DNA from: Macrostomum lignano
Taxonomy: Eukaryota
Reading direction: 5' to 3'
DNA length: 64,000 nt
NCBI GenBank assembly: GCA_002269645.1
Contig: NIVC01000031.1
Coordinates: forward strand, 1,054,001 to 1,118,000
Under the pieces are notes generated by a model. It was given only the letters and a program-made list of their open reading frames with translations, was not told the DNA's origin and did no database searches. Below, piece after piece: positions 17,560-62,840 of this stretch. Each line of letters starts with the position of its first letter. Position 1 is the first letter of the stretch. A program made the position numbers and the translations under genes.

Positions 17560-18120
<561 letters not shown>

Positions 18121-18124
<4 letters not shown>

Positions 18125-18397: not shown

Positions 18398-18481
<84 letters not shown>

Positions 18482-27069: not shown

Positions 27070-27715
27070 AATGAGTCTACCAGAATCCTAATGAATCTAC
27101 CTGAATTCTAATGATTCTACCTGAATCATAACGAGTCTACCTGAATCTTAATGAGTCTACCTGAATCCTAATGAGTCCACCTGAATCCTAATGATTCTAC
27201 CATATTTCTTCTGAGTTGACATGAATTCTAATGAACTTACATGAATCCTAGTGAATCTACCTGAATCCTAATGAGTCTACCTTTAACCTAATGAGTCTAC
27301 CCGAATCCTATTGAGTCTACCTAAATCCTAATGAGTCTACCTGAATTCTAATGAGCCTACCTGAATCCTAATGAGTTGACATAAAGCATAATGAGCTGAC
27401 ATGAGCCCTAATAAGTTGACATGAACCCTAATGAGCTGACATGAATCCCAATCAGTTGACATAAACCCTAATGAATTGACATTAACCCTAATGAGCTGAC
27501 ATGAATCCTAATGAGTTGACATAAACCTTAATGAGCTGACATGAATCCTAATGAGTTGACATAAACTTAATGAGCTGACATGAATCCTAATGAGTTGACA
27601 TAAACCCTAATGAGCTGACATAAATCCTAATGAGTTGACATAAGCCCTAATGAGCTGACATGAATCATAATGAGGCTTCTCGAATTCTATTACGACTACC
27701 TGAATCCAAATTTGT
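27070..27715. repeat. 20-bp minisatellite (ATGAGTCTACCTGAATCCTA) changing to an alternating 40-bp dimer
   Basis: Monomer in the first half; from about 27360 alternating ATGAGCTGACATGAATCCTA / ATGAGTTGACATAAACCCTA. Confidence 0.93.
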
Positions 27716-39516: not shown

Positions 39517-39810
39517 GTCTTCTTCATTTGTCTTTTTGATTTGAACTGCTGTCCTCACAATATGTCTTATTCCACTGTACTCACAGGCGTGCCGAGCCAT
39601 TGCTGCCATAGGCCCCGGCTCACCAGTGTGGACCAATGAACAATGAATCAAAGTCAAAACTAAATCTTTCTTCATCTACAGCAGCCACCGCGTGTCAACA
39701 ATAAAGATAATCTTTCTTCATCTACAGCAGCCACCGCGTGTCAACAATAAAGATAAGTGCATTACTATTTGTCAATTAAATCAATTATAAACTGTGCTAA
39801 TCAAATTATA

Positions 39811-42637: not shown

Positions 42638-44167
42638 ATGGTAAAACGCAAACGCACGTTTTGTAATGTGCCAACTAATACAAATAGATCGCGGGGCGAG
42701 ACGTATTCGAGGCAAAGCAGAAATATTTGGCTGTTACGGCAAGCTTCCGCTAAAAATCGCTGCACATTTATCATGCCGACGATAGTCCGACTTATTGACC
42801 TGTTTGGATCTCGAGACGACCTTCAGCTCGCCTGCTGTCAAATGGCTCGATCCGCAGCTGAAAACGGAGACGCTTTCACGGCTAGACAGTTTGTCAATGT
42901 TTTGTCAGTCAATCAGAAACTGAACGCTGAAGATATGGACGAGTTTCTACTAGAGCTGATAGTTATTTCGCAACGGAACTGTCGCTGGGAATCGATGGCC
43001 CAGTTCTTAGTAGCTATCGACAATAGAAGTACGAGAAATCATCGTTGCGCAGTCGCGGTTAGAACGCTAGCCATAAATTGCCAATGGGCCGTGGCCATTC
43101 GCGTAATAACGATCATTCAAAATGAAGACCTGAAGCTGCAGTGCGTCTCTGAATTGGCTCAACGGGCAGCCAAGTGGGGCGAGAAAAGAACGGCCTTGAG
43201 AGTTGTTAAACTCGTTTCAGATTTGAAAATTCGGGATTCCGTGTGCATTATTGCAGCAATGTCTGCTAGCGAGAAAGATCGCTGGAGCTTAGTCACTAAT
43301 CTAGTCCACCTCATGTCCGATCCGAACGCCAGAGATGAATTTTGTCGCAAAGCGGCCGCATCAGCGGCGTCACACTGTCGTGACAAGATGGCTGCGTACG
43401 TTAACTTATTGACTGACAAGGAGAAATCAAGTGACATTCGCCTCGAGGACATTGAATGGCCGGCGAAGTTCCAGAGCCAGTGGACTACAGTTATTGGCCT
43501 CGTTAAATCCATAGTTGATGAGAACGTGAGGCTCGATTGCTGTAATAAGATTTGTTCCTATGTTGCTAGTCAAGGCTATGCCGAAGTTGTGTCCAGCATT
43601 CTGAGCATCATCTCGGATCCTAATCATAAGGACCAATGCTGCAGTAACTCTATTAAAGCCGCAGCATCTCAAGGCCATCGGAATGTTGTGCACCAATTAT
43701 TACCAACAATTTCTGATCAACGTCTACAGGAAGAACTACGCGTTTCCATTTTGACCAGATCCGCTTCCGAGTTTAGTAAACCAGAATTTATTAGGCAGCA
43801 ACTCGAAAGTATTTCTGACACAAATCTGAAAGATGAGTGCTGCTCTGGAATCATGAAATCTGCCGCTTCTGTAGGAGACTGGAAGACGAGTAAGTACACA
43901 GCGGGTCTGATAGCAGATCAATCGGTTCGAAGCCATGCCTGCAGCAGCGCTGCAAAGTCTGCCTCTCGACTGGGCGCGTCAGGTGAATTTGATTATTTTC
44001 TAGCGGAAATAAAAGACAAAGGCATTGTTATATTCACCTGCATTGAATCCGCCAAAGCAGCAGCCCATAACTGCAACTGGGAGATGGCTAACCTAGCCAG
44101 GACAACAATCAGCGAACTTCCACTGAAGGATCAATGCAGCGCCGACTTGGCAATTATTGCAGCTACT
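42638..44167 (+). CDS. cGLR fusion, segment 1: about 13 atypical 33-aa alpha-helical (ANK/TPR-like) repeats
   Basis: Periodic unit such as SDPNHKDQCCSNSIKAAASQGHRNVVHQLLPTI; likely start MPTIVRL or an upstream exon. Confidence 0.75.
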
Positions 44168-44178
44168 GTAGATACACT

Positions 44179-45059
44179 CGGCCCAACTGGGAGCAAGCTC
44201 AGGCTGCTGCTAGGAGCATCAGTGAACCAAGCACCAGGGACGCCTGCTGGATTCGCTTGGTCGAGACGGCTACCCGGCAGCGCTCGTGGGATATGGTGAT
44301 CAGCATGGTGCAAGAAGTTTCAGACCAAACGGCTAAAGAGAAGCTCTGCACAGAGGCAGCTAAAGTCGCTGCAGCAAGAAGCCAAATTGAAGTGGTCAAA
44401 CGTTTGCTTCTAGTTATTAGTTGCGAAGCTAGCAAAAACCTTTGCTGCATTGAGGTCGTAAAGGTTGCAATCTCGCATGGCCATTGGAATTTTGTTTTAG
44501 GCATTCTACAATTCGCTGGTCGAAACAAAATAAAGCAGATTTTCAGTCCCGAAAATTGCGAATTCATTTTTGAAGACAGGATGCTGCACGATTTAGTGCA
44601 CAGCGCAATAAGCTGCTCAAATGAGAATAAAATTCCTGCACTTGAGCAGATTCTGCCTCACTTAGCTCACGCGCAACATCTCAGGCTTATGGCCAAGTGC
44701 ATCTCGGATGGCTACGTTCCAATAGTATTTAACCTGCTGCAACACTTGAAACAAATTGACGAACCGATCGATTCGAGCAGCACGTCGCTAATGCTAGCCG
44801 CAGATTCTGGACAGTGCGAATTAGCAGAGCATCTACTCGCTCAAGGCGCATCGGTAAGTGTTCAGGACGAGTTCGGTAGGACTGCGTTGTCTCGAGCCTG
44901 CATTGCTGGTCATATTCGAGTTGCCATGGCGTTGATCGATAGCAGATCAGACATCGAACATCGTGACCGGAACGGACAGAGCTGTGCTCAGTTGGCTGAA
45001 CAATTCCAACATTTTGATGTGCTTAAAAAACTTCAACATCATTTTGGTTCGATTGCGTT
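44179..45059 (+). CDS. cGLR fusion, segment 2: 3 further 33-aa repeats plus about 3 canonical ankyrin repeats
   Basis: TSLMLAADSGQCELAEHLLAQGA, DEFGRTALSRACIAGHIRVAMALI, DRNGQSCAQLA; ends at donor TT|GTAAGT. Confidence 0.85.
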
Positions 45060-45306
45060 GTAAGTTAAACCTTGATTAAATCAACAATAATTATAGGCAA
45101 TTTAAAGTGCTGCAATGTTTCGGATAAATTTTCCTCATTTCTTCCATAGAATTACAGACGAAAGGAAGCAGTACAGACAAGAAACTGAGTTACAAGTTAC
45201 TCAACCAAAGTAAGTGTGTATTCTATTCAGTTTTAAATAGAATTTTGCGGTATTACAGGGTTAACTTGATTTGAAACTCAATTTTCATTTTTGCTCTATT
45301 CTTAAG

Positions 45307-45821
45307 ATTCGCGAAACTTCTAGCTGACGAACAACAAGTTGATGAGAGACTGAGCGAAGATCTGCATCGTCTGCTCAACAATGCTGGCTTCAAGCTCACC
45401 AGGGTACATTTTCAACATGAGGTTGCTGATTCGCTGGAAGAATTAGTTCAGGCATTCACGCAGGAATCACGATACATGACTGGAAGCTACTCTGAAGGCT
45501 GGGGCTTCAGTTTAAAACATTTGAATGGAAAAATAGCGTCAGACTCTGACATCGACTGGACCGTAATTGCTGGTGACGAATTATTCCATCTTGAAGGCGG
45601 CTGTAAATGCGCAGGCGTCGCTAGACTAACATTGGTGGATGGTCATACACAAGTATCAACTATCGTTGGTAAGTTCGAACTCAATTCAGAATTGTCTTTG
45701 AAAGTTCAAGATTTCGATTGTATCGACATAAAACGAAAGAAAGTTAAGTCACTTTCGAACTACCCAGAAAACTTGATTAAAATGACACTGTACTCGAGAA
45801 CTGTGAGTGAAAATGAAGCAA
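45307..45821 (+). CDS. cGLR fusion exon: Mab-21/cGAS-type NTase core
   Basis: Spine-helix-like LSEDLHRLLNNAGF then MTGSYSEGWG...SDSDIDWT (GS plus DxD); preceded by a 60-bp linker exon 45150-45209. Confidence 0.8.
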
Positions 45822-46793
45822 GTACGTCGTACGTGCTTTATCCAAAGTTTATCAAACTAAATAAGTGAAAGCGTAAAAATACAGTTTTTATGTGCAAACA
45901 TTTCACAAAAATTTACTTTGTATAACGACTAAATTAAACTTCAGCGAAACTTTGCTTGCTTACCCGCATAGACAACTGAACTACTAGGCCACTATATATC
46001 GGGTGATTTCAATGCAAGTTTTTTTGACCGAATTTATCCGTTCTCTGGTTGTAGATTTACATTTTTCAAGGTTCTGAAGAGTATACGTTCCTTATCGGCC
46101 TCCAGCTCTACGAAAACTTTCTAAGAGAAAAGTCTAGCTTATTTCTACTCGTAATTCAGTTGTTTATGTCGAAGAAACTTCTTAAACAGCATTGAAGGAA
46201 ACCGCTAACTTGTAGCTCGTAGCTACTAGCTTAATTTGCAACCAGCAGAAGTCGATCGGTACATTAAATTTTAACCTGGTGCGTGAAAACCGAAAATTTA
46301 AAACAAAAAACTGAGAAAATTCTGTCCTTCGGTTGTTGACAATTAAAAACCGACAGACTGACAGTTTGTACTCGCATATTTCGTACCTTTCGAAGTCAAA
46401 GAAGAACTAAAGAGATATTCGGGATTGACTGCTGCTAATAACTTCTTGGTCGGGCCATGGAGCAAATAAAACACATGAAATTACAGTTAGAGATCAAGAG
46501 CATAGATAAAATAAACAGCTGGCGGCAAAATAATATACAAATAACGAGTTATACCCTCCCACTTTGGAGATAGCTATAGAAAATAATTAGTGAAGGATCT
46601 CAAACCGACAACTAAAAGTATTGTTGTTTAATTTAAATTAGCACACTATACCATGGCTGTTTTCTTATTTTATCGTGCCTTCTGTAAGCTTCTGTTAATT
46701 TTTTATTTTATCTGAAAACAAAGTCAGGCATCAAAATACACCCACCCGTACGCTGAAAATCGTATAAAATTAAATGCAAACTGCTAACTTCAG

Positions 46794-48219
46794 GTGGCAA
46801 TCCGGCTCTGAGAATTGACGGATGCGGCGTTCGACCAGCCCAGGACACATGCCAAGCGTTTCCATGCTGTAGCAGCCTTTGAGAAGAGAAAATTCGTCAG
46901 TTAATCGCTCCTCAGCCAGTCAATGTGCATCTAGTCAGAGCTTATAGACCCAATAAATCAAACGAATTGAGGATTAGCTTCAGCCTGCACGAGAAGCAAA
47001 TTATGAGGAGCTTGAACTCAATTCAAGGCCAATTGTTCATTCTCCTCAAATTCATATTTAAGCATCAGCTACCAAAAGAATTCAATACGCGAGGGCTGAA
47101 AACCTATCACGCAAAAACCTTGCTTTTCTTTATGATGGAGAAGTATATAGCTCTGATACTACTGCTTGGCAAAGCTTCAACATTGTTACCTTGCTCAAGG
47201 AGTCTCTGGATCTCATGCTTCAGTTTCTTGATTGGAGCCATTCTCGGGACGTTTGCATGCCGCACTTCTTTATGGAAAACGTTTCACTTTACTTTAAGAA
47301 TGCTGGCACAACTTGTGGAGACTTTAATTCTACTAAATCAAAAGTTAGACGTTTCTTGTCGAAGCTGCGAAATGACGTAAACCTTGTTGTCGATTCCATC
47401 CGAAATCATGTCGATACGCTCACTTCAAATTGCTTCTTCTTTCACCCGTTCACTCTGCTGCCACTGACCGGTCAGCCAAACTCAGTTTCCAACGTAGATC
47501 CAACCAGCACGACAAAGCTCTTAAAAGCCTATCGAACAGTTCAAAGGTGCATCCATGATCTTCAATCAGAAACTTGTCAAATCGACCTTCTACTTTCTAG
47601 GCTAAATTCACTACCAGAGGTATTTCAATGTACGCGGATGTGCCTGACAATAATAGCCCTGTTAAGACAGTCAAATCGAGCTGAAGCAGCCAGGTTAGCG
47701 CAACAACTTGTCAGTCATAGGGTGCAAAGAGCGTGGAGTTCAAGTGGAAGCCTTACAGCAAGCCTGCTTGACGATCGTGGTCCCGATTGGGCCTGGAGAT
47801 TCTGCATTCCCAGCCTAAAAGAGGCTCAGTTTCACTTCTTACCGGCCATCACTGGTTCTCTCATCTCAGCAAGGCTTTCAGTTGCTGGGGCCTCACATTT
47901 GTACTTTAATTTCCGTTGCATTGGCTGGAGCCTGCAAGCTGAGCTGCTTCAGAAAAACGATTATAACGTTCAAGATTGGTACGATGAGATGCAAGAGGAC
48001 GCCGATCTAGAAGAGCTCCTAGTCCTGGCTCATTACAGTGACTGTCCGGAGCATCTCCAGTTCAGTTTGGAGCAAGCTACTATTAAGGAGAACGGCAGCC
48101 TTTCGATGACTATTCGGGATCGAAAAAAACTCGGGGTTATTGCGAAAAAGCTTGAGATGCTTCAAGCTGAGAAGTCAAACGTCAGCAGTGAGTTGGAAAT
48201 TCAATGCGACAGTCTGTAG
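46794..48219 (+). CDS. cGLR fusion last exon: third acidic residue, Mab-21 C-lobe and C-terminal helical domain (contains a stop and a frameshift)
   Basis: Branch point ctaac plus cag| acceptor; PAQDTCQAF, LRISFSLHEKQIM, GLKTYHAKTLLFF, CMPHFF, WAWRFC, HLYFNFRC. Confidence 0.8.
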
Positions 48220-50395
48220 TTTAATGCCAGGCACGCTCGTACGGCTTGAGATTTATCAAGCTTAAAAAATACGAACTTTTGTTTGTACTCGTACATACGC
48301 TGAAGATTTTCTGTTAAGAGTTCTATTTCGATATCGTTTAAATATACATCTGATGAAGATGTATAGATGCATTTAGTACTTAAAGTACTAAAGAAAGAAG
48401 ATTAGCTGCAGTAAAGTACTTGAGGTAGTTCTACAGCAGTTAGAAGTCTAGAAACTTTTTAGAATCAACAAAAATTTTTCTGAATTTGGACTGTCAGCCT
48501 TTTAGCTCCAATTGCTTTTAGGACTTAAAAAATCTGAACATCTAAACCAAAACACATTCAGGACACACTAAAACGCATAAAGACACACTACAAAGACACA
48601 TCAAGAAACACTGATACATCACGGGGACTCTAAGACGCGTCAAGACGCACCAAAACAAACAAAGACACAACAAAACATTTAAAAGGCAATCTAAGATCCA
48701 CAAAGACGTACCAAAACATACACGGCTACTATGATGAGATCATGGAGAATTCACTTGCAGTGTGCTTCGTACTTTTGCTTGGCTAATTGTTTACAGTAAT
48801 TCGAATTCATGAATGATTATACTAATTTTTCCATAATCTTGAAGCTCATCGCTTTAATTGACTGTGCAATATGTTTAATTTGATTCTGCTATTAAATTGA
48901 TATTACTGAAGTGGTTCTTATTTATTTACGAATATACGAACATGTAATATAATACGAACATGTACTATAAACTACATGTATAGTACATGTCATTTTACTG
49001 CTTTCTATTTGCGTGATTTAAACAAACTGTTACAAGTAACTAGACAATTTTTACGCGAATGCATACTTTTGGGACGAATTAAACCTGTCGCAGCGTAGCA
49101 GACCTTGGCACTCAAAAACGAACATAGCAGAATATATATGCATATAGCTGTCCAAGAAAGTGATTATATTTAGCTTGCTGAGTAGGCCAAGTTTCTTAGA
49201 GTAGCTAGGAGAAAACAAGTTATTAAAAATATATCAAAGCAATAGATAGTAGTAGCGAATTATGATTGGTTGATAGTTACGTGGGCGCTGGGCAAGATTA
49301 TCGATTGGCTAGAAATTTATCACATGCTGATATATAAAACCCAATTGCAAGAATGTACACACAAGTTACACAAAATAGGATACATTTACGTATTAGTCTA
49401 CTGACAGTAAAAACAATGACATTTCACAACTAATTCAATCCCGTCACACTTTAGTGACAGCTACTAGATTAGATGTATCGGAAGATATGTCACTCAAATA
49501 AATTTGAGAAAAATCAAAGCGTCTTCTCCTTTTCAATAGTTTGTCTGCGCAGCGTCATTAAAATTCAATATAGAAACGTAACTTTTCCTTTAATTCCTGT
49601 AATGACTCAGACTAGCTATTTAGTTTGGCGAGAGAAACGATGCGCTTTTAAAATGAGCCGACTGCTCAATTCAATATATTTATAGGGACGAGAGTATTGC
49701 GTAATAAGAATATTGCTACGAATTCATCGACCAAGCCAGCCGTACATTATTATTTCCGCGCAGAGCGTACACTACAATTACTTAGGGGTTAGTGGCCTCA
49801 GGAGCACATCGAGCATTAAAGTCCGGTTGACTCCTGGTTGGGGTTTCAAGTTTTTCCTCCTGTCTTCAGTTTTTAAATAAATTTCTTGTTAAATTTGAGT
49901 CGGAGGCAAGCCTTGAGTATGTAAAACAGCTGGTATGAAGATGCTAATATCGGGTTAACGCTTCCATGAATATATATTCGAGACAACTAAGCTATTTAAA
50001 TGATTATGATAAACAAAAAATCAAACATTAATCACACCAAAAGAAATTACTACCAATGGAACCATTCAGCTCTTAATGTGATTAATTCTTCTATATATAG
50101 ATACATATCGTAAAAATTGTAAAACGTAAATTCGCTACTGACTGGGTTACACTACAATGGTGACACTTTTATTAACGTTTCATTACAATCAGTACAGAAG
50201 GGATGCAGCGATAAGATAAACATCGCTTCAATAGATGAATATACAAAAATAGACAAAGGGGTGGAAAAGTGCAATCGAGTATATACGTCCGACTACTTTT
50301 GAATCACCTGAAAAATATATGGTTTAGGGCTGTTTAGAAATTAAGTGACTTTGGACTTTTAAAAATGAAGTCGATCTTTAGTCTTCTAAAATCGA

Positions 50396-51111
50396 TTATA
50401 GAATAGAGCAGTCGCCCTCTCTCTCTCTTTCATGTACGTGGACTTCGATTTCCCTTCGTTGCTGATATTGCATTTCCAACCTTTGATTTCTAAGCTCCTG
50501 TTCCAATGTTTCTCGCATTCTCATGCGTAGTACCTCCATTGCCATACCGAACTCACGAGCGTGCATTTCCAGCATCATCTTAATCATGAACAGATGCTGA
50601 ATTTGTTGGATCTGCGACTGCTGTGCCACTTGCAGTTGCTGGGTCTGGCGTAGAGCGTCAGAAATCATCACCATCTGGTTTTGCGCGTCTGACTCAGTTT
50701 CCTGATCCGTTTTTTTGAAGCGCTTTTTGTTGTGCTGTGCAACTTCATCGATTAGTTCTAACAAGTCATTGATCTGCTGCTGTCTTAACTCGGAGTTGGC
50801 ATCGCTCTTGTCATTACTCAGCACGGTGACCCTATCGCCCACTTTCGACAGCAGATCTCTGAACTTGGGAATCGCAGGGCATAGTTTATTTTTCAGATAT
50901 TCTTGAAAGCCTCTCTTGTTGCCATTAAGCTTTTCACAATGCGTGAAGACAATGATCGCTCTTTCAAAAGCTTTTGGGCCAAACATTTGACTGCATCATT
51001 GGCAGCATTTAGTTCTTCCTCAGTCGCCCTGACATCGTATCTTAGGACAATCAGAAAGGCATCCACTCCTTTTGGACAATCGTCAAGCGCACTTGTCAGG
51101 TTTTCAGGCAC
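50396..51111 (-). pseudogene. AIG1/GIMAP-family GTPase, C-terminal two-thirds, ending in CaaX (CSIL); one frameshift; G1-G3 exon not found
   Basis: CPKGVDAFLIVLRYDVRATEEE..MFGPKAFERAIIVFTHCEKL..LLSKVGDRVTVLSN..QINDLLELID matches the AIG1 switch-II-to-helix region; a 1-nt deletion in an A-run at 50986-50988 joins the two ORFs. Confidence 0.8.
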
Positions 51112-51984
51112 TTTATTTACGAACGTATGAAGTTTAATCGAAGCATGTCGTATATGGAACTACTCACCGCGTGTGCTACAGTCGTAGCAGCTGTGCCAAA
51201 CAAAAAGGAGACTTGGTTTGCAAATAATTGTAAGCTTGGACACTTGCAGGTAGATTATAACCGAGCCTGCTTGTACGAGTATAAAGCTTTAGAGCCCACC
51301 CTGACAATTTATAAGAAATATGCGTAAAATCGAGGTAATTCCCAGGTAAATCCAAGGTAATTCAGTGGCTACTCCGCGGTAACTCCACTGTAACTACGCA
51401 GTCACTCCTCCGGGCTGCCATATGCTGCTGTTTCAATAAAAGGAAAAAGTCATAATGACTTATCTTAATGACTTAATGACGAAAGGAACTTAATCTTATT
51501 TAAAATTTGATCTTTATCCTATTTATTTAGTTAGCGCATTTCACGTCGTATTACTAATAGCTGCATTCGAAAACTCTGCCAGTGTCATGATCGATAAAAT
51601 TTGAATACAGAAAATGTCGCATTAAAATTCTGCGCCTTTTAGATTTACACATACATAGGCAAAATTATTTAAATTTCTGCACTGTTTCTGCATTAATTCT
51701 GGCTTCTAGTACATGTAGAGCTAGCAAATTCACAATTCTTTTACAGCTTGTATTTTACACAACCCTTTTAGGCTTCTTGATACATATTTGGCTTAAACTA
51801 CATGAAGACTGGCTCGTGACCGACCGTGCCCCCCTCCTCAACTTAATGATATCCCTTCCGGCAAATCATGACATCGCCTCCCGTTAAGCAACATCAACTT
51901 GGAAGAGGCTGGCCATCTGAGGGAGGCCAGAGTGTTAAATTTGATTTTTATGCTCTGAGGACCGACAGGCTTCCGATCGACCAA

Positions 51985-52820
51985 GGGCTTAATTAAGAAG
52001 GCGACCATTGAAGAGAGAGATAACAGCGTTTCTATGAAGATTTGGGATCGAAAGAAGACTCGAGATTAATGTGACATCGCTCGAGACTCTCAGGCTGAGA
52101 AGTCAAACGGCAGTGAGTTGGAAATTCAATGTGACAGTCCGTAAATTGATGCCACGATCGTACGGTTTTGAAATTATTTGTCAAGTTGAACAAAAATTGG
52201 GAAATTTTGTTTGTAGAAGCAATTTTGATTCGCAATGAATAGAATCAAATGAATATAGTAATGAAGAAGATAAGTTTATTTTGAAAGTAAAGAGTAGCTG
52301 CATTTGATGTACGAAGTTGTTAGTAAAATTCGAAAAGTTCTCAGACGTCTTGCAAACTTATTTATTTGGGATCAGTAATGATTGTTGATTCGGACTGGCA
52401 AGTATTTTTTGTGCAATAATTTTTTTAAGAGCTACAGGCATCCTAGATTTCGGAAGGGAGACTGAAGAAAACTTTTCTTAAGCACTCTAGCTACTTTTGA
52501 AAGACTTTTGTAGCTACTGTTAAAAAATGAACCGAAGCAAGACGCACTAATACACCGGACTACACAAAGACACAAAATGATGCTAAGATAAATATAAAGG
52601 TACACTAAGATACTCTGTACATGAAGACATACTAAGACATCACTACACACGCCTCAATACATCGAAACACGCAGACACAAAAAGATACTCACAGACATAC
52701 AGCAGTATGTCTGTAGTACAGCAGTAAAGCAATACAGCAGTACAGTACAGCTGCTACAGTACAGCATCTTTATAAACCTTTTTATTTACAGTAATTCGAA
52801 TTCTAGAATGCTTTACATTT
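51985..52820 (+). repeat. Diverged duplicate of the cGLR 3' coding end and downstream flank (48070-48830)
   Basis: GCTGAGAAGTCAAAC..GCAGTGAGTTGGAAATTCAATG and TTTACAGTAATTCGAATTC shared; translates KATIEERDNSVSMKIWDRKK versus QATIKENGSLSMTIRDRKK. Confidence 0.8.
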
Positions 52821-52905
52821 ATCTTCCTATGTAACTGGGTAATATCTTACAGCTCGCCGATGCAATTAACAGTGCAAGATGTTTTGGTCTGGATGGAGGC
52901 GCCAC

Positions 52906-52908
<3 letters not shown>

Positions 52909-52990
<82 letters not shown>
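52909..52990. repeat. (CT)n microsatellite
   Basis: Directly visible. Confidence 0.97.
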
Positions 52991-52995
<5 letters not shown>

Positions 52996-54295
52996 TTCCT
53001 GCAATTTTTCATTTTAGTTTAATTTCCTTTTCATAAAATTTGAGCCTGAGGCAGTGTACTACGCTCGTAGAGTCATCAAAACAGGATGAAGATGCAAATT
53101 TAAAGGTTCTGCATTTCTTGTGACCAAATTAGTTATTCTAGTGTCTGTGACTTTTGCGGGCATTTTCTTTTTGCTATTCGAAAATGATTTGGTTTTAGTG
53201 TCTTCACCTGTATTGCATATTATATTCGCTTGAACTAAATACTCAGCAAGTACCAAAATTACGTATACGAATATTACGCTTCTGCTGACGTTTGCAAAAA
53301 GATAAAAAAAATTTTCTAAATGGTACAAAAAATATTTGCGTTGTCGGTGGGAAGAATCAGCATTATATTCTATAGTGTGTTAAAATTCCTAATATTGCAT
53401 TAATACAACCCGAATGTTGTTGAAATTCAATTCAACACAGACTACTAAAAGTGGCATTGGTGTAGAGTAGCAAGCAAAACGATCAATATCTACCGGCCTA
53501 AAATTTGGTTTCTATGCCAACAAATAACGGAATAACGGAAAACGGAATAAAGCCTCTCGTACAAAAAGTACGAGTAAATACGCACGAAAAATCTGGGTGT
53601 AAAAGAAGCAAACGATTTAATTGCTGTCTAGGTAAAGTTTTGTTTTGTGAATCCTAGACCCCGAAGATTTGCAATACTCGTAGTAGCTCACATAGCTTTT
53701 TTTGATAACATATCATTTTCTTGATAACAGCTCGGCATAGAAATACAGCAAGCCGAAGGGTATGAATAGAAGAAAAAGCCAAACATTACTGTTCTTGAGC
53801 TCCCTACCCACACTGTGCTTCAAAATCTTACGATTCATACAGTTGTAAGTTGTATGCTCTTTTCGAGCACAAAAACACGGGTATAGAGAGAGTTTCGGAA
53901 TCTAACTCTAAAGTCTTATTTCTTATCTCTGCACCACCGCAATCTGTATTATTTTCTGTCCGTATCTCAAAGGTCTAAAACCTTTGGACTGTTACGAGCT
54001 CGTAAATTGATTGCAGCGATAACGTTGGACTTGTCTAAGAAACAATGTGCGAGAAAAATTAATATTTTGCGTTTAACGAAACGAGGACCAGCTAATAAAA
54101 ATATGATTTAGCAAATTAATAAACATTAGCAAATGAAAAATTAATCACAAAAAAATTTGAAAGTTTTTGGCAAAGTTAGTAATTATTGGGACGGATGTGC
54201 AGTGTGGTAGCGCCTACAGATTGTTGATATTTTAAGGCGATTGTTTTAATTTTGAAGTTTAAACGGTCTCCATAACACATGTAGTGTATATGTTA

Positions 54296-56786
54296 TCACT
54301 GGCAGTCTAGAAACATGTGCTCCAGAAGTTCGTCGGTATCAGCTCGACTCTTAGGATTCCTCACAACGCAGCGACGATAGAAATCCCTCAGACTGTCGGA
54401 GACACCATTTGGAAGATCTGGCATAGGATTTTTCTGGATTCGGAATCCGACTTGCTGCCAACCCAGCTCTGAATTGGGCGGCTCCATCGTTAGCATTTCG
54501 TAAATTGTGCAGCCAAACGCCCATACGTCCGATTTGGGTGAGTACACAGTTTTGCCTTCCTCGTTGAACAGCTCTGGAGCCATGAAGTTGACGGTGCCGC
54601 TGAGACTTTTGGTGCTACCAATGCTGTGGAAGATTTCTTTGGCGAGGCCGAAATCGATCAGTTTAATGATGCCTTTGTGGCTCAGCATGATATTGCTGCA
54701 CTTAATGTCCCTATGCAGCGTCACAGGATCGCGGCTGTGCAGGTAGTTGAGAGCGACGCAAATCTGTGAATTTAATAGTTTTTTAAAAAGTAAAGCAAGA
54801 ATTAACATTTAGCTACATGTAGCTTGCAGGAAGAGGCTACCGTTGCCTACAGCCAGATAATGATGCATCCATCTGGAGGCACAGCAGCCGTTATACTGCA
54901 CACACTGTTAAAAAGGCAAGGTCTCCATTTTTGCTCAATCTCTTGGTAAACATTCTGTACCCTTCAAATTGAAAGCAAACTAATCGCAGAATCGAATCCC
55001 TAACGCGATTACTGTTCGCTACTCTCCGACAATGCTAATTCACATTTTTAGTATGAAACCTACCTGCATAGAAAAATCCCTGACGGCGCATTCATCAAAC
55101 GGTTTCCGCTGACGTCGTATCAGATCAGTGAGACTATGGCCGGCGATGAGCTCTGTAAAGATGCACAACTTGTGGTTCCTGGTGCGCTGAAACTTGAGAA
55201 ACTTCAAAATGTTTGGATGCCGAATGCTTCTCAGAACAGCAATCTCCGCGTTCTCCTGTTCAACCGCTTGGTCTAGAAGCTTCAGGTTACCCACAATTTC
55301 CAGCTGAATAATCTTGACGGCCACAGTTTGCCGCTTGTCGGTGAAGACTTTGAACACCTGGCCGAATCCGCCTTCGCCAATTTGTTGCTTATTGCCTTCG
55401 TCGTCGTAGAGGAAGTCCCAATTCGTGAAATCTGGGTCCAATGGAAGCTTGCGTCTGAATAAAAATGTGAAACGGAATGATTTAGGCCTGTTCAAAACTT
55501 ATTTAAAGCAAATTTTCTCCTGAAATTGTAACGCAGCTGTAATATGCGTTATTGGTTGTATTTTCAGTACACACCAAATACGAGTACAAACCTAACTAAG
55601 GAGCTCCGATTGGACGCAGGACTCCGGTCTTCTTTGGCTTCATATTGCTGCTCCTCCTGTTTTTGCTCCTGCTGCTCCTCCTGTTTCTGCTCCTGCTGCT
55701 CCTCCTGTTTTTGCTCCTGCTCCTGCTGCTCCTCCTGTTTCTGCTCCTGCTCCTGCTGCTCTTCCTGTTTTTGCTTTTGCTGCTGCTCCTCCTGTTTTTG
55801 CTCCTGCTCCTGCTGCTCCTCCTGTTTTTGCTCCTCTTCCTGCTGCTCCTCCTGTTTTTGCTCCTGCTGCTGCTCCTGTTTCTGCTCCTGCTGCTCCTCC
55901 TGTTTTTGCTCCTGCTCCTGCTGCTCCTCCTGTTTTTCTAGCTGCTGTTCTTCTTGCTGCTGCTGCTCCGTTCGCTGCTGCATTTGCAAGCAGGCCATCT
56001 CTTGTATCGGTTCGGACTGCTTCTCCGACTGTTTTTCCTTTATTTCAACGATTAACTGCAGTATCTGCTCCCCGTGCAGAGTGTTTTCTTGCGCATAGTC
56101 GGCCAAAGTCTTTCCGCTAACATCGACGAGATTGAATGCTGAGCAATCCAATGAATTGAAGATGAAGCGGAGCGAGTCCACATCTTGATATTGAGCAGCC
56201 AAGTGGGCAGGGGTCGTGCCATTTGAGTCTTTAGTCAATAAGCAGGACGAATCAAGAAGTGAGACCAACATTTTGAGGGAAGAACTTTGCCGTACATTCA
56301 TAGCAGCAAAGTGAACAGCATTCTGGTTGCTGCTATTAGTCTGACTAAAGCAGTCGCATCCTAGGATTGTCTGGAAGAGCTGCAACGAATCCTCATCTTG
56401 CTTCAAAGCGGCGAGATGTATTGGAGTATTGCCGAATTGGTCGCGAACAGATAAACAATCGACACCGCATTGCTCAACAAGCCACTTAAGAACAGAATTT
56501 GTCACTTCATTTAAGGCGGCATTGTGAAAAGCGTTGCGACCGTTGTTGCCCGTCTGATAGAAGCAGTCACTTCCAACGAGTTGGTGGGCAAACCTCATCC
56601 ACGACTCGTCTTGGTATAGAGCGGCTAGATGCACCGGAGTGTTGTTTAATTTGTTCAAGCAGGTGAGGCAGTCGGGTCCAAGCCGGTAGAAGTCGATGCG
56701 AGTCTTTGGCTCGAATGGCAGCTGCCGCGAGCGATTTTTGCATCGAAATTTGGTAGGCCATGCTCGAAATGTGTCAAGAAAGCTGC
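54296..56786 (-). CDS. Ankyrin repeat / Q-E coiled coil / Ser-Thr kinase (STE/MAP3K-like); exons ~56786-55592, 55454-55064, 54763-54296; 5' end unresolved
   Basis: ANK motifs NTPVHLAA, RNAFHNAA, NTPIHLAA, NAVHFAA, TTPAHLAA; EQEQKQEEQQ repeat; kinase GEGGFG, VAVK, HRDIKCSN, DFG, APE intact. Phase-2 intron 55591-55455 and phase-0 intron 55063-54764 keep the frame. Confidence 0.88.
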
Positions 56787-57004
56787 TGCTAGCTATCAGG
56801 CGGGTGAGAAAAGTAGAATAAAAGTGGGTCGTCTCGGGCTTTTATATGCCTATTTAAGTCTCTCACTATACTAGTATCTCATACGTGAAGTAAGAGCGTG
56901 CATACCTGTCTACCCTAAATAGAACCGTTTTCAGAAACAGAGGCTGGACAGAAATGCATTACAAAATTACAGTGTACAGTGCTGCTTAAAGCCAGTGCAA
57001 CAGT

Positions 57005-57132
57005 TGCTGCTGCTGCGTTACAGGTACCGCTTCGGCGAGGGCAGGCGCGCAAATGCCTTGCCTGCTCACTGCTTTCTAACGCCAACCGACCAGGAATCTG
57101 CCTTGTGAATCATGTTGCTGTTGTTGTTGCTG
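57005..57132 (+). mobile_element. Short 3' fragment of an RTE element related to 34872-36590
   Basis: Encodes LQVPLRRGQARK, matching the element C-terminus; TGTTGCTGTTGTTG tail. Confidence 0.55.
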
Positions 57133-58194
57133 AGTTCGATCAGTGATAAGATCTTGCAGTTTCTATAAATTAACTTGTGAGTAGAAAACTAAAAATTACA
57201 CACCACTAGCAAGATTCTACTGTAAGTAGTAATGCTTGTACGTCCAAAGCAAGCGGGGCTTTTAAAACTAAATAACGAGACTTTTCTTGCGTTGATAAAA
57301 GTAAAATATTGCACCACACAGCGCATGAAATTTTCCGGCCGGGCTATTTACCGATTTTCAAACCAGGTCTGATCTGATTGCTTTTAAATTGATCTACTGG
57401 TGTGGCATTTATAAAATCAGCATAAAAAGGGGGACCAAAGAGAAATGAAAATGCTTGAATTAAAATTAGCTCACTCGTGGATCCATATACCTTTTTGGCC
57501 TACGAGGTACAATAGAGTGTGCATATCCACGACTATACCAAACTCTCTGTTTCGTGAAAATCCAGTATAATGAATCTTCATCATGATTAGCTGGTGAGAT
57601 TCTTTCTCCACGTTAAGACTGCTTGGAAATTATCGACAGCTATTATTATTTATTAATATTATTATTTGTCATTTATTCTAACAATTGACATAGGACTTAA
57701 AATTTTATTCAAGTATTGGAATCATAAAAACTAATTATTGACTGCCAAAAAATCGACTGATGGTCTTAGTGCAAGCCATAACCTTAACATAAACCCTAAC
57801 CTAAATTTTCGGAAGTCAAATTTTATTGGCAATCACATTTTAGGCTACTACTAATATATATGTTCTATAGCAAACAAAGAATATAAAGTACCCTAGCATA
57901 ATGAGCTACAACTTTATGTACGGTATTTTGTCCCATCTTTGCCACAGCAGCATTTAGTAATGAAAAATTTACAAATCATGGGTCATATTAAAATGAAAAT
58001 TGTCCATCAAATTTTACAAAATAAAGTTACAATCGGATATGTAAAAGAACATAAACACATACACGAATAGTCTCGTTCAGTCCTTGACAAAATTAGCAAT
58101 TAGCTAATTTCAATTTCCTAACACACCTATGAGTAAAAGTGTCAAAACCTTGGTATTGCAGTGTCAAAAGTGCCAAAGCATTTGTGCTTTGTCA

Positions 58195-59665
58195 AAAACG
58201 GGTGCAGTAGATCCTCTCTAGTCTTTCACTGGCCTTTTTAATCTTTTCAAAGTCCTGAGTGTCCATGGCGACGCGTTTTTAATCTCCGATCTCTGTCATC
58301 TGTCGCTACACAGAACTCTACGTGGTCGCGGCAGTCGCTTTAGTGGGCAAGAGTGAGCAGCTCCTCCAAGTCTGGGTCTTCTTTCAACTCATCCAACCAC
58401 GGGTCAAAATTGATCGGTGAGCAATCGTGCAGCAGTTCCGCTTGAAGACTCCAGCTCAGGCAGCGGAAGTTCACGTACAGATGGGAGGAGCGAGGCTGCA
58501 ATAACCTCGCTGTCAACAGAGTCTGAGTAAACTCAGGTAGGTAAGGGAAGAGAGGCGGACAGTCACAAGGAAGGCAGAATCTCCACGCCCAGTCTGATTC
58601 AGTGGGTAGACTTGTCCATTGAATCCATTTAGTTTCATTTGGCATCAAGCCTAGTGTAATATCCTGCATCTGAAGCTGTTTTAACAAGTTCACAGCCTGC
58701 TCAAATTCTCCAAATTTGAGATGCGCAATTGCGGTCAAGCATAGGGTGGCGCACTGGCACCACTGCAGCGAGTGCAAAAGATTCAGCTGCCTCCAGCAAC
58801 GAGACTTTGCATCTAGAAGAGTGTCTCTGTTGTTTGACTCTGACTGCAATTCACTAATACAATTGTTGACCAACCTGTATACATCAGCGTACTTTAAATA
58901 GTGCTCCTCCTCATCAGTTGCTTCTCTGATCTGAGCGACATCAAATAAAGTCCTCAGTGGAAGCAGAGTGAATGGCTAAAAGTAAAATTTCTCTGACTGC
59001 AGCGGTCTCACGAGTTTTCTTAGCTGCTCGACCACTTCACTGACATCTCTTCAAAGCTCGCTAAGTCGGTCTCGAACCCTCGTTTTTGTGTTGTCAAAGT
59101 CACGGCCGATTCCAGCATTCTTAAAGTAGAATGGAACGTCAGAAGTTAAAAAGTGCGGCATGCACTCATCAGGTAAGCTGCTTGAGTCCATTATGACACC
59201 ATCATGTCTAGTGCCTCTTTTAGTAGAACGATCAAATTTTGGAACTTCCAAGCTAAGGTACTAACTAGTTCTGTGCTTCTCAAGCATAAAGAACATCAGA
59301 GTCTTTGCATGATAAGCCTTTAGTCCATGTGTGTCCAGAAGGAGCGGTAAGTACCTCTTAAAAATAAACTTAATGACAGCAAACAGCTGACCCTGAACTG
59401 CACTCAGTTGCCTCATAATTTGCTTTTCATGAAATTCTGATGGCTAACGCTGCCGCTGACGATGCAGGCACCCTACCGGCGAGGACAGGCGCGCACTCGG
59501 CATTTCGTCGACTGTCTGCTGGCTGACGCTGGCGCCCCGGACTCTGCCGGGGGAGCAGCCTATGTTCGCACCCTGGCCTTGAGACGCGCCCTGTGACACT
59601 AGAGACTATCCAGTGTACTTTGTTGCTGTGTTGTTGTTTTCATGGAAGCTGAAGCTGTATTCTAG
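58195..59665 (-). pseudogene. Second Mab-21/cGLR pseudogene (C-lobe and C-terminal domain only)
   Basis: FHEKQIMRQLSAVQGQLF, GLKAYHAKTLMFF, ECMPHF, PFTLLPL, WAWRFC, HLYVNFRC, DPDLEELL are collinear with 46925-48219; several stops and frameshifts; NTase core not found upstream. Confidence 0.88.
59434..59640 (+). mobile_element. 5'-truncated RTE insertion inside the second cGLR pseudogene
   Basis: LTMQAPYRRGQARTRHFVDCLL matches the RTE C-terminus; TTG tail; flanking TTTTCATGAA (59424-59433) / TTTTCATGGA (59637-59646) read as a TSD. Confidence 0.8.
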
Positions 59666-60365: not shown

Positions 60366-62840
60366 CTAGCAAGTATCCACAAACGGAGTCAGAAGCTGTA
60401 GCACAACTTGACCATGTTCTGTGGGCGAAGCCTCAGCGAACTCGCAGCGGCTACCACCGCAGTAGGAGCCGCCGCCGCCTCCGGCCTCGATATTGTTCAC
60501 CCCGGCCCCGCCTCCGCTGAAACCACCACCGCCGCCGGCTGCTCCGTACTTGCTAGGCTTGTCGAAGCCACCGCTACCGCCGCCGCCGCCGAAGCCGCCG
60601 TCACCGATGTTGCCGTCTCCAGAGACACCACCAGTCCAGCCTTTGGCCAGACTGCCGCCACTATCACCGTCGCTGGAGCTTCTCCTTGGATTGTGTGCCG
60701 TACCAAGCCAGCCGGCGCCACAGCCGCCATGGAACTGGTCGTTTGGTGTAGCGCTTGGATTGTTGTATCCGGGACTCCCAAGGTTGCCACCGAATCCCGT
60801 GGTTAGTATAGTCGAAGAGTTGCTGATGCCACCGTACGAGTTGCTGCCGTAGACTTTGTGTAGAGCGTTCAAGCCTAGAGTTTTGAGATGACAAATTTTT
60901 TTATTTGAGACGAGTGATTTTAGCACCTTTTGCAATATTTTTACTAGCAAAATTTCAAATACTGTTTATAGTCCTCTTGAAGTTTCGACGTTTTTTGACC
61001 GTCAAAATCAGTGAAAAAGAATGACATAAAATTGAGAAAACGTTTTTGTGACGTTTTCTGTGGCTTCACTTGATCTTACGCACAACATTGTTGCAAGCTG
61101 TAAAGACCTATAGTTCATTACAGAGTGCCGTAGCGTCTTTTTAGAGTTCACAGGCGGTCTGTATTCAAAGATGGTTTATGCTTGCACTAGGCTTTTATTG
61201 TAACACTTAAGTGACGATAAAATATGCTGTCAGCAATGTGTGCTACAGTCGATTTTGCTATTATTTCATCACTGGTTGCTAAAACTAACGACGATCTAGC
61301 ATCTAGCTCGTAGTATCTGATGGCTGTCTGTAGAGGCAGAATCATAAAAGCTACACCAAGCTCGTCACATTTTTTTCAAGTGAAAAACCTCGAGCTTTTT
61401 TAAAACACTGTTTTAATTTAAAGCAGGATTTCTCAGCTCTCATTCAATCTCCGTAGCTAAACAGTATGGAAAAAAGCGAAGACCCCAGTAAAGTAAAGAC
61501 CCAAAGAAACTTTCCATCAAACATAGACGAGGCACCGCCGCCACCGCCGGCCGCCATCAGCAATCCGCTGTCGTTTGCTCGGTACACAAAGCTGCCGCCG
61601 CCGCCTCCGCCGCTAGCAGAGTCGCTTGTCGCGGTGGTGCCCGCCTGTCCAACAACGACACTCAAAGCTGTGCCAGCACCAATAACGAAGCTTCCAGCGA
61701 TGGCGGAACCGTTACCCCCGATCTTGCCGCAACAATCTGACCCTCCGCCTCTGGCGCCAGAAATTTCAATTCGATAGCAACCGGCCAGTTCAAATTGGAC
61801 GCGCTGCACAAAGCCTCGGCGGCCAACGCTGGAATCTAAATAAAAAATAAGAATATTTAATTTCTAAAAAAACTGTTAGCTTAATCAACGAAATTCAACA
61901 CTCAGTAAAGCTCTGGATCATCAAACTGCAATAGATGTCTTGGGGCTTCTAGTTCAAAAAGTTTTTGATTTCAGTCGGTTTTGTCGGTAGCCTTACTCCG
62001 GCGTAGTCATTCCGGCACTGAATTTGATGCTTGCATTATTCGAGAGTAACTAATCGAGTAAAATCTTCTCTGTCAACATGCTCAGTGCGTAGAACTCAGG
62101 GACGTAGGCTTGAAAATGAATTTTAATTGAATTATAATTTTGAATGATCCCTTGGCGTCACTCTGAAATTTCAATACTCAAACGTAAAAAAACTTTTCGA
62201 ACAAAATCCACTTAGCGTTACAATTTTCAGAAATGCTTGGAAGTAATGTTGTTTACCGGTAGAGCATTAATATATAATAGCACTATACTCTAGTCCTGTA
62301 TGGATTTTGCTTGCAATTTACTTATAATTATAGATTAGAAAATAAATGTAGAAAAATCAATAATATTTTAAGACTCCACTTACTGCTAAAAGTGACCGTA
62401 CTGTTGACAACTTTCGAAATGTTAAACTGTCTGTCTCGAATGATGGCGTCAAAATTTCCAACCTTCCATATTTTGGCTCCAATTTCGAAGCCTAACCGAC
62501 GTTGCTTGTGACTCTCGGCTGGGCCAGCGTTTTTTGACGCATCGTTGACAATCAAGAGTTGGCAAAAGCTGCTGGTCTCAAAGACAACGACAGCAGAGCA
62601 TGCTCGAATTCGACAGGCCATCAAGCATTCTGCCTTCGACGCTAGATTTATAACATTGACGACTTCACTGCTGACGGACGAGTCAATCAGCAGAGATTGC
62701 TTGGATGGGATGTACTTCAAGCTGGGACAGTCAGATGGCAGAACTGTGTGCGGGTTCACGACTGTGGCTGTGAGGTATGCGGCTGCTTCTGTGAGTGCAA
62801 CAGAGAAAATTAGAAATAAATTTTTTTCAATAGTACTCAT
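60366..62840 (-). CDS. Secreted PAN/apple-domain plus ALK/LTK-type glycine-rich domain protein (possibly damaged)
   Basis: Signal peptide and ECLMAC..CSAV..CQL (62840-62390); YRIEISGARGG, VVVGQAG, GGGGGSFVY, LMAAGGGGG (exon ~61835-61515); GGFGGGGG, GGGGGFSGG, GGGGGSY (60874-60366). Donor at 61514 reads GAAAGT; the intermediate exon near 62000-62110 could not be phased. Confidence 0.72.

What the first reader, a model, noticed from the sequence alone, without database searches (positions are those of the whole stretch)
42638..59665. Compact innate-immune-like birth-and-death cluster: three cGLR remnants interleaved with a GIMAP and an ANK-kinase
Seen: within 17 kb lie a cGLR fusion, a GIMAP fragment, a duplicated cGLR 3' end, an ANK-kinase and a second cGLR, in different states of decay. 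Known: cGLRs and GIMAPs are immunity-associated families that expand in invertebrates. Inference: a rapidly turning-over defence locus in which synthase, nucleotide-sensing kinase and membrane GTPase may be functionally linked, loosely like a eukaryotic defence island.
Basis: inference. Interest (0 to 1): 0.75.

Follow-up and report, generated by a model that had tools for sequence, protein, structure and literature searches.

The report
Decaying flatworm cGLR/kinase gene cluster copy
This stretch of the flatworm Macrostomum lignano genome holds five real gene pieces (two cGAS-like genes plus a scrap of a third, half of a GIMAP-type GTPase and an ankyrin-kinase), all broken here, and it looks like one redundant, decaying copy of a locus in a recently duplicated genome rather than a working immune "island".

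Summary
The window is Macrostomum lignano DNA, 99.5-99.7% identical in its flanks to two contigs of GCA_002269645.1.

- **Copy 1** (42638-48219, +) is a helical-repeat/ANK/Mab-21 gene. It belongs to the M. lignano family that Li et al. 2023 classed as cGLRs, and it keeps the GS, DxD and D active-site residues. In the window it carries three lesions: a 5-nt insertion, a TGA and a TA insertion. The sister contig L002 has none of them.
- **Copy 2** (59443-58210, -) is a 5'-truncated pseudogene with at least 5 stops, identical in all three versions of the locus.
- **The third piece** (52001-52215) is about 200 nt of copy 1's 3' end and occurs only in this haplotype.
- **The AIG1 fragment** lacks the P-loop in every version.
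- **The ANK-kinase** is STE-group and 95% identical to the annotated BOX15_Mlig007464g2. Here a 122-nt deletion shifts its frame.

In 11 other M. lignano cGLR or ANK-kinase loci (295 kb) the three families never co-occur. cGLRs only sit beside other cGLR copies.

Turnover is supported. A functionally linked defence island, a "nucleotide-sensing" kinase and a "membrane" GTPase are not. The finding is ordinary and of low interest.

The parts
42638..45059 (+). Copy 1 ANK-cGLR, exon 1: about 12 Cys-rich helical repeats of roughly 35 aa each, then ankyrin repeats. A 5-nt insertion (CTGTA, 44166-44170) shifts the frame.
   Evidence: ORFs 42638-44299 and 44134-45063 lie in different frames. Ank_2 E=1e-16. 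L002 lacks the 5 nt and reads through. The donor GTAAGT is at 45060.
45307..45668 (+). Copy 1, exon 2: the cGLR N-lobe with MTGS (the G-S loop) and DIDW (two catalytic Asp).
   Evidence: It aligns with MGSFAEAW/DADVDV of the Li et al. cGLR PAA86972.1.
46794..48219 (+). Copy 1, exon 3: the third catalytic Asp (RPAQD), the Mab-21 C-terminal helical domain and a family-specific tail of about 230 aa. It has an in-frame TGA at 46880-46882 and an extra TA within 47144-47149, which shifts the frame.
   Evidence: L001 and L002 have TGC (Cys) at the TGA position. L002 has TATA instead of TATATA, giving one 487-aa ORF. Family members hit Pfam Mab-21_C at E=2e-6 to 6e-6.
50399..51159 (-). AIG1/GIMAP-type GTPase fragment: the C-terminal 60% of the G domain plus a Q/E-rich coiled-coil tail. 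There is no P-loop. A 1-nt difference in a T-run (50981-50983) shifts the frame.
   Evidence: AIG1 E=9e-20, profile positions 72-196 of 212. No GxxxxGK[ST] in any frame of 48000-54500. L002 has T4 and one 258-aa open frame. Nearest relatives are only 25-37% identical.
52001..52215 (+). Relic copy of copy 1's last ~40 codons, stop codon and start of the 3' UTR.
   Evidence: 76% nt identity to 48096-48287. It has no syntenic counterpart in L001 or L002.
54296..56761 (-). ANK-STE-type Ser/Thr kinase gene. Exons are 56761-55592, 55454-55064 and 54763-54296. The Q/E-rich linker repeat lies at 55646-55981. A 122-nt deletion at 56684/56685 shifts the frame after codon 26.
   Evidence: 95% identical to P0033, BOX15_Mlig007464g2. 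Deletion shown. Exon structure, and a 650-aa open frame downstream of the deletion, shown.
58210..59443 (-). Copy 2: a 5'-truncated cGLR pseudogene of the main M. lignano subfamily. Only the C-terminal Mab-21 domain and tail remain.
   Evidence: 60% aa identity to P0003 residues 529-902, with at least 5 in-frame stops and several frameshifts. No N-lobe match upstream. At most 1 mismatch to L001 and L002.

Best explanation
The window is one of at least three near-identical copies (homeologous or allelic) of a locus in the neopolyploid flatworm Macrostomum lignano. The locus holds members of two lineage-expanded families, the ANK-fused cGAS-like receptors and the ANK-STE kinases, together with an old AIG1 half-gene and old cGLR debris.

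This particular copy is degenerating. The cGLR gene (copy 1) has picked up two frameshifting insertions and a nonsense codon. The kinase has lost 122 nt near its start. The two cGLR relics and the AIG1 fragment were already dead or incomplete.

- **Shown:** the identities of the elements, the lesions, the state of each lesion in the three versions, and the absence of the three-family association at 11 other loci.
- **Inferred:** the cause. The most likely one is relaxed selection on redundant copies after the recent whole-genome duplication, acting on top of ordinary tandem duplication and partial deletion of cGLR genes. The intact L002-type copy 1 would, if expressed, act like other cGLRs: the ANK and helical repeats as a ligand- or partner-binding module controlling a nucleotidyltransferase core that makes a cyclic-nucleotide signal. 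That is inferred only from conserved catalytic residues.
For: - **Species and synteny:** megablast gives 99.5-99.7% identity over 7.3 kb and 98-99% over 4.7 kb to NIVC01002201.1 and NIVC01000505.1.
- **Lesions are copy-specific.** The TGA is in the window only. The TA insertion is in the window and L001. The 5-nt insertion is absent from L002. L002 shows uninterrupted ORFs of 310, 197 and 487 aa with the same splice sites. The kinase deletion is in the window only.
- **Copy 2's stops are shared by all versions**.
- **The assembly is not riddled with indels:** an intact 1278-aa ORF lies at 996-4832.
- **M. lignano is a recent hidden tetraploid** (PMC5704211, PMC10733133).
- **cGLR membership:** hhalign to the Li et al. 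M. lignano cGLR gives probability 100%, E=3e-44, with GS, DxD and D aligned.
- **Tandem and partial cGLR copies occur elsewhere:** L008 has three and L010 has two.
- **No cross-family neighbours** in 295 kb around 11 other family members.
- **Annotation:** only the kinase is a called gene in L001 and L002.
Against: - The relationship between the window, L001 and L002 (alleles, homeologs or uncollapsed assembly duplicates) was not resolved.
- The AIG1 frameshift is a homopolymer length difference, which could be an assembly error.
- The region 51.5-56.5 kb is 5-30% diverged from L001 and L002 while the flanks are 99.5% or more identical. That points to recombination or gene conversion, not just simple decay.
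- No expression data were available, so the L002-type gene being functional is unproven. It is not annotated, and no near-identical protein exists in the 5.8-billion-cluster database.
- Eleven loci is a small sample for judging co-localisation.
Confidence: 0.75

Rival explanations
1. One reading: this is a functional, rapidly evolving defence island in which a cGLR synthase, an ANK-kinase and a GIMAP GTPase work together, for example with the kinase or GTPase acting downstream of the cyclic-nucleotide signal.
For: cGLRs and GIMAPs are immunity-associated, lineage-expanded families (PMC9980059). The adjacency is kept in all three versions of the locus. In L002 the cGLR and the kinase both appear intact. 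Given family sizes of roughly 30-50 clusters each, one chance adjacency within 10 kb is mildly unexpected.
Against: The association does not recur at 7 other cGLR loci or 4 other kinase loci. The kinase has no nucleotide-binding sensor domain. The AIG1 piece lacks G1-G3 in every version, so it cannot be a GTPase. All elements are disrupted in the window. The three versions are copies of a single locus, so they are not independent occurrences.
Confidence: 0.07
2. Some or all of the recent lesions (5-nt insertion, TGA, TA insertion, T-run change, 122-nt deletion) are assembly or consensus errors. On this view copy 1 and the kinase are intact genes in the real genome.
For: The AIG1 frameshift is a T3/T4 homopolymer difference. 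The TA insertion lies in a TATATA microsatellite. The reference contigs come from a long-read assembly.
Against: The TA insertion and the T-run state are shared by two separate sequences, the window and L001. A C-to-A substitution, a 5-nt non-repeat insertion and a clean 122-nt deletion are not typical long-read errors. Long ORFs elsewhere in the window are intact.
Confidence: 0.1
3. The gene fragments (the 5'-truncated AIG1, the 5'-truncated copy 2 and the 200-nt 3' relic) were brought in by transposon-mediated capture or retroposition, not generated by local duplication and deletion.
For: The region upstream, 35-41 kb, holds reverse-transcriptase fragments and RPA-type OB-fold ORFs typical of mobile elements. 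Copy 2 belongs to a different subfamily from copy 1: 72% nt identity to the main subfamily versus 65-70% for copy 1. The two are therefore not local duplicates of each other.
Against: No repeat or TE sequence shared with the other loci flanks the fragments. The 3' relic derives from the neighbouring copy 1. Partial tandem cGLR copies with the same 5' truncation pattern sit directly next to full genes elsewhere, as in L010, which fits unequal crossing-over.
Confidence: 0.08

Closest known systems
Metazoan cGAS-like receptors (cGLRs) of Li et al. 2023, including the M. lignano proteins in their screen (e.g. PAA86972.1) and their ANK-fused class
   Same: Same Mab-21/cGAS-type core. The G-S loop, D-h-D and third Asp align. 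It has the Mab-21_C helical domain. ANK-cGLR fusions and large lineage-specific expansions are described there.
   Different: It is only 34% identical to the screened M. lignano cGLR. It has an extra N-terminal Cys-rich helical-repeat array and a family-specific C-terminal tail of about 230 aa. No product, ligand or activity is known. The window copy is a pseudogene.
GIMAP/IAN (AIG1-type) GTPases
   Same: Significant AIG1 match. The nearest relatives are vertebrate GIMAP8-like and plant or mollusc AIG1 proteins. It has a coiled-coil-like tail.
   Different: It lacks the N-terminal third of the domain (P-loop, switch regions) in all versions. It has no start codon and no hydrophobic anchor. It is at most 37% identical to anything in 1.84 billion representatives.
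STE-group kinases (MST3/MST4 STE20-like; MAP3K5/ASK1, plant MEKK1-type MAP3Ks)
   Same: Full kinase domain with VAVK, HRDIK, DFG and APE motifs. The best solved matches are MST4/STK24 (E about 1e-39) and MAP3K5 (E about 1e-36). The best non-flatworm database matches are plant MAP3Ks.
   Different: It has an N-terminal ankyrin array and a long Q/E repeat linker. The family is expanded in M. lignano, with more than 40 clusters. No link to nucleotide sensing was found.
Homeolog decay (fractionation) after whole-genome duplication
   Same: Several near-identical copies of one locus carry different, recent inactivating lesions, in a documented neopolyploid.
   Different: It was not shown that the three versions are homeologs and not alleles or assembly duplicates. 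One internal block is much more diverged than its flanks.

Membership tests
cGLR (criteria of Li et al. 2023, PMC9980059) | Homology to the cGAS/Mab-21 fold | tested here: met
   Family members hit Pfam Mab-21_C at E=2e-6 to 6e-6, above the gathering score. The family profile hits cGLR1 8gjy (E=0.0036), cGAS (0.05) and MAB21L1 (0.14). hhalign to a Li et al. M. lignano cGLR gives probability 100%, E=3e-44 over 304 columns. Structural confirmation failed: the AF2 core had pLDDT below 50 and Foldseek found nothing.
cGLR (criteria of Li et al. 2023, PMC9980059) | G[S/G] activation-loop motif | tested here: met
   MTGS in copy 1, invariant G46/S47 in alignment A2.
cGLR (criteria of Li et al. 2023, PMC9980059) | [E/D]h[E/D] followed after X50-90 by a third [E/D] (the catalytic triad) | tested here: met
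   DIDW, then the invariant Asp of RPAQD about 53 residues later. This Asp aligns with the TDL of PAA86972.1. Its flanks (Q, T) are not hydrophobic, so the stricter search regex h[DE]h is not met. Li et al.'s own M. lignano sequences also fail that regex.
cGLR (criteria of Li et al. 2023, PMC9980059) | Ligand-activated synthesis of a cyclic nucleotide signal | not testable with these tools
   Needs recombinant protein and a nucleotide-incorporation assay.
cGLR (criteria of Li et al. 2023, PMC9980059) | Intact coding sequence in this window | tested here: not met
   Copy 1 has a 5-nt insertion, a TGA and a TA insertion. Copy 2 has at least 5 stops and lacks the N-lobe. The third piece is only about 200 nt.
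GIMAP / AIG1 GTPase | AIG1 domain match | tested here: met
   PF04548 E=9e-20, 71 bits against a cutoff of 27, but only profile positions 72-196 of 212 are covered.
GIMAP / AIG1 GTPase | G1 P-loop GxxxxGK[ST] and the G2/G3 switch motifs | tested here: not met
   No such motif in any of the six frames of 48000-54500. The upstream frames are the same in L001 and L002.
GIMAP / AIG1 GTPase | C-terminal membrane anchor (relevant to the claim of a 'membrane GTPase') | tested here: not met
   The C-terminal 100 aa are Q/E/R-rich and end ...HVHEREREGDCSIL. No hydrophobic stretch is visible on direct reading. No transmembrane predictor was run.
STE-group protein kinase | Complete kinase domain with catalytic motifs | tested here: met
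   Pkinase covers profile positions 4-263 of 263 across the two exons. VAVK, HRDIKCSN, DFG and MAPE are readable. The nearest solved structures are MST4/STK24 and MAP3K5.
   Only ANK and Pkinase families appear on P0033 and on the window ORFs.
Defence island / functionally linked cluster | Recurrent co-localisation of the component families at independent loci | tested here: not met
   None of 7 other ANK-cGLR loci and none of 4 other ANK-kinase loci (295 kb in total) holds a member of the other families. This is a small sample and not a genome-wide test.

The most novel reading that the evidence does not exclude
The adjacency of an ANK-cGLR and an ANK-STE kinase, both apparently intact in the L002 version, reflects a real signalling pair in a flatworm lineage where canonical cGLR-STING signalling is otherwise thought to be largely lost. 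On this reading the kinase acts downstream of, or together with, the cGLR through their ankyrin modules.
Probability: 0.04. Interest if true: 0.7.

Novelty: new member of a known kind. Interest (0 to 1): 0.2.

Why it matters
It matters little beyond annotation. The analysis documents an unannotated, divergent ANK-cGLR lineage in M. lignano that is intact on one contig and freshly pseudogenised on others. It also gives a concrete example of copy-specific gene loss in a neopolyploid genome. It removes a tempting but unsupported 'eukaryotic defence island' reading. The intact L002-type gene could be added to cGLR catalogues and tested for activity.

Tried and rejected
- **AlphaFold2 of family member P0009 with a 21-sequence alignment.** Mean pLDDT was 62, and the NTase core (residues 60-195) was below 50. 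Foldseek against the PDB gave no hit at E<=0.001. No structural test of the active site was possible.
- **Profile search of the full-length family against PDB sequences.** It was swamped by ankyrin hits. I repeated it with a trimmed core.
- **Word-indexed homology search with the AIG1 fragment.** No hits. The exhaustive search found only distant relatives.
- **Search for a degenerate P-loop upstream of the AIG1 fragment.** The stretch 'VSFLFGTAATTVAHAVSS' at 51254-51120 looked vaguely P-loop-like, but Pfam did not extend into it and no motif was found. Rejected.
- **Strict Li et al. search regex.** Too strict to be used as a membership test, because their own M. lignano entries fail it.
- **An early reading of the frame changes as short introns.** Rejected, because no sequence is missing relative to homologs and L002 differs by exactly the inserted bases.
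- **Dispersed repeats flanking the fragments.** I looked for them by blastn against the other loci and found none.
- **Literature search for 'Macrostomum' plus 'cGLR'.** No paper.


Full report
**Source of the window**

An ANK-kinase query built from the window found BOX15_Mlig007464g2 of Macrostomum lignano at 95% identity (P0033). The two contigs of assembly GCA_002269645.1 that carry that gene (L001 and L002) align to the window at 99.5-99.7% over 7.3 kb on one side and 98-99% over 4.7 kb on the other. The window is therefore M. lignano DNA. The database holds two further versions of the same locus. [quoted passage not shown]

**Checking the observation**

All five elements are real.

*Copy 1 (+ strand).* It has three exons, 42638-45059, 45307-45668 and 46794-48219, with canonical GT/AG sites and matching phases. 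It encodes Cys-rich helical repeats, ankyrin repeats (Ank_2 E=1e-16), a nucleotidyltransferase N-lobe (MTGSYSEGW...SDSDIDW), the Mab-21 C-terminal helical domain and a long tail. More than 30 M. lignano proteins with the same ANK+Mab-21 architecture match it at E down to 1.6e-144, but at only 39-48% identity over the long alignments. It is therefore a divergent, unannotated lineage.

*AIG1 fragment (- strand, 51159-50399).* It matches Pfam AIG1 (E=9e-20 with the frameshift bridged), but only over profile positions 72-196 of 212.

*Third piece (52001-52215).* It is a 76%-identical copy of copy 1's last ~40 codons and the start of its 3' UTR.

*ANK-kinase (- strand).* It has three exons, 56761-55592, 55454-55064 and 54763-54296.

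*Copy 2 (- strand, 59443-58210).* It aligns to residues 529-937 of P0003 at 60% identity. It has no N-lobe upstream.

**Are these cGLRs?**

Sequence searches alone are weak. Family members hit Pfam Mab-21_C at E about 1e-6. The family profile hits cGLR1 8gjy at 0.0036, cGAS at 0.05 and MAB21L1 at 0.14, all in the C-terminal domain.

Li et al. 2023 (PMC9980059) define cGLRs by homology to cGAS plus a G[S/G] loop and an [E/D]h[E/D]-X50-90-[E/D] triad. [quoted passage not shown] They nevertheless list five M. lignano proteins in their biochemical screen and describe ANK-fused cGLRs.

A profile of the window's family aligns to their PAA86972.1 with probability 100%, E=3e-44 and 34% identity. GS, D-x-D and the third Asp (RPAQD against RPSTDLIPAF) fall in register. 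These residues are invariant in the family and present in copy 1. The label 'cGLR' is therefore justified by sequence criteria, but enzymatic activity is untested.

A structural check failed. The AF2 model of P0009 was unreliable in the core (pLDDT below 50) and Foldseek found nothing.

**State of each element in the three versions of the locus**

| Element | Window | L001 | L002 |
|---|---|---|---|
| Copy 1, 5-nt insertion (44166-44170) | present | not covered | absent |
| Copy 1, codon at 46880-82 | TGA | TGC (Cys) | TGC (Cys) |
| Copy 1, extra TA in TATATA (47144-49) | present | present | absent |
| AIG1 T-run at 50981-83 | T3, frameshift | T3, frameshift | T4, one 258-aa open frame |
| AIG1 P-loop region | absent | absent | absent |
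| Kinase 122-nt deletion after codon 26 | present | absent | absent |
| Copy 2 lesions | present | present | present |
| 200-nt 3' relic | present | absent | absent |

- *Copy 1.* The three lesions are shown. In L002 the three exons read as uninterrupted frames of 310, 197 and 487 aa. Copy 1 is thus a very young pseudogene with an apparently intact sibling.
- *AIG1 fragment.* The frameshift is a T3-versus-T4 homopolymer difference. In every version the fragment lacks the P-loop and switch region, and no GxxxxGK[ST] exists in any frame of 48000-54500. Its nearest relatives among 1.84 billion representatives are only 25-37% identical: GIMAP8-like proteins of vertebrates, plant and snail AIG1 proteins, and distant M. 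lignano AIG1 proteins.
- *Kinase.* The deletion means the annotated start now gives a 64-aa peptide. The remaining 650 codons are open. L001 and L002 are intact and annotated.
- *Copy 2.* It has at least 5 in-frame stops plus frameshifts, and it is identical in all versions, so it is an old pseudogene.
- *The 200-nt relic* exists only in the window's haplotype.
- *Block divergence.* The block 51.5-56.5 kb is 5-30% diverged from L001 and L002, while the flanks are 99.5% or more identical. The versions are therefore mosaics.
- *Assembly quality.* The window is not generally error-ridden. An intact 1278-aa Ig/FN3 receptor ORF lies at 996-4832.

**Testing the 'linked defence island' idea**

I fetched +-10 kb around seven other ANK-cGLR genes (L003, L004, L007-L010, L013) and four other ANK-kinase genes (L005, L006, L011, L012). 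These include the closest kinase paralogs. The total is 295 kb.

tblastn with the window's cGLR, AIG1 and kinase domains found no cross-family neighbour and no AIG1 sequence at any of them. What does recur is cGLR beside cGLR. L008 holds three copies. L010 holds a full gene followed directly by a 5'-truncated copy shaped much like copy 2.

The annotated neighbours of those genes are unrelated housekeeping genes or retroelements. One 1.1-Mb contig holds two kinases and one cGLR, but they lie about 600 kb apart.

The kinase is an ordinary STE-group kinase. Its best solved relatives are MST4/STK24 and MAP3K5 at E about 1e-39 to 1e-36, and its best non-flatworm relatives are plant MAP3Ks. It has no sensor domain beyond the ankyrin repeats. 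'Nucleotide-sensing' and 'membrane GTPase' therefore have no support.

**Most likely explanation (confidence about 0.75)**

This is one redundant copy of a locus in a neopolyploid genome, caught in the act of decaying. The locus combines members of two expanded families with older debris produced by tandem duplication and partial deletion of cGLR genes. The mechanism of decay (relaxed selection after duplication) is inferred and not shown.

Rivals:
- a genuine functional module (about 0.07);
- assembly errors for some lesions (about 0.1, most plausible for the homopolymer change);
- transposon-mediated capture of the fragments (about 0.08). Reverse-transcriptase and RPA-type OB-fold ORFs lie just upstream at 35-41 kb, but no TE signatures flank the fragments.

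**Novelty and interest**

cGLR expansions and ANK-cGLR fusions, including in M. lignano, are published. GIMAP and kinase family expansions and post-duplication gene loss are ordinary. The only new items are an unannotated divergent ANK-cGLR lineage and its copy-specific lesions. Interest is low (0.2).

Noticed in passing
window 996-4832 (-): A single uninterrupted 1278-aa ORF encodes an Ig (I-set x4) / FN3 transmembrane receptor of Robo/DSCAM-like architecture, with a long Q-rich cytoplasmic tail (Pfam I-set E=1.5e-65, fn3 E=2e-22).
   Followed up: partly
window 10004-10696, 14437-15312, 17541-18526, 19172-20385, 22157-22616, 24436-24804, 27040-27711: About 20 kb of dense tandem and minisatellite arrays (units of tens of bases, 85-98% identity) lie between the receptor gene and the cluster. 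Several arrays are related to each other on opposite strands.
   Followed up: no
window 35327-36541 (-) and 38479-40910 (+): Reverse-transcriptase fragments (RVT_1, below Pfam's gathering score, E=9e-6 and 6e-4) are followed by a 345-aa ORF containing a 69-nt tandem repeat (38557-38943) and by two RPA-type OB-fold ORFs (REPA_OB_2 E=1.3e-6). This looks like mobile-element cargo directly upstream of copy 1.
   Followed up: partly
window 60366-61809 (-): Gly-rich ORFs match the ALK/LTK glycine-rich domain (PF12810 E=3.3e-11), just beyond copy 2. The stretch is identical in L001 and L002, apart from a single-base gap in L001.
   Followed up: no
window 51500-56500 compared with L001/L002 10000-15250: This internal block, which includes the kinase, is 5-30% diverged from both reference contigs while the flanks are 99.5% or more identical. 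In 47000-49000 the window is identical to L001 but not to L002. The versions of the locus are therefore recombinant mosaics.
   Followed up: partly
window 55646-55981 (kinase linker): A Q/E-rich coding repeat (EQQEQKQE...) differs in length by about 159 nt between the window and L001/L002.
   Followed up: no
P0004 (UniRef model of M. lignano), C-terminal 200 aa; L008 and L010: The P0004 model ends with a second, divergent cGLR N-lobe (GSYSEGWGNSL...SDIDV...RPAMD). It is either a multi-cGLR fusion or two tandem genes merged by annotation. L008 and L010 show tandem and partial cGLR copies.
   Followed up: partly
P0009 residues ~370-600 (equivalent to window 47500-48200): The family-specific C-terminal tail (DWAWRFC...HLYVNFRCLSWSLQAELL...DPDLEELLTLAHYSD) is the only part AlphaFold2 modelled confidently (pLDDT about 90). 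It had no significant PDB match and may be an undescribed domain.
   Followed up: partly
L002 versus window 44500-45000: L002's otherwise intact copy 1 has a 42-nt in-frame deletion (14 aa, ...IPALEQILPHLAHAQHLRLMAK... becomes ...IPAPVMAK...) just before the ankyrin repeats.
   Followed up: no
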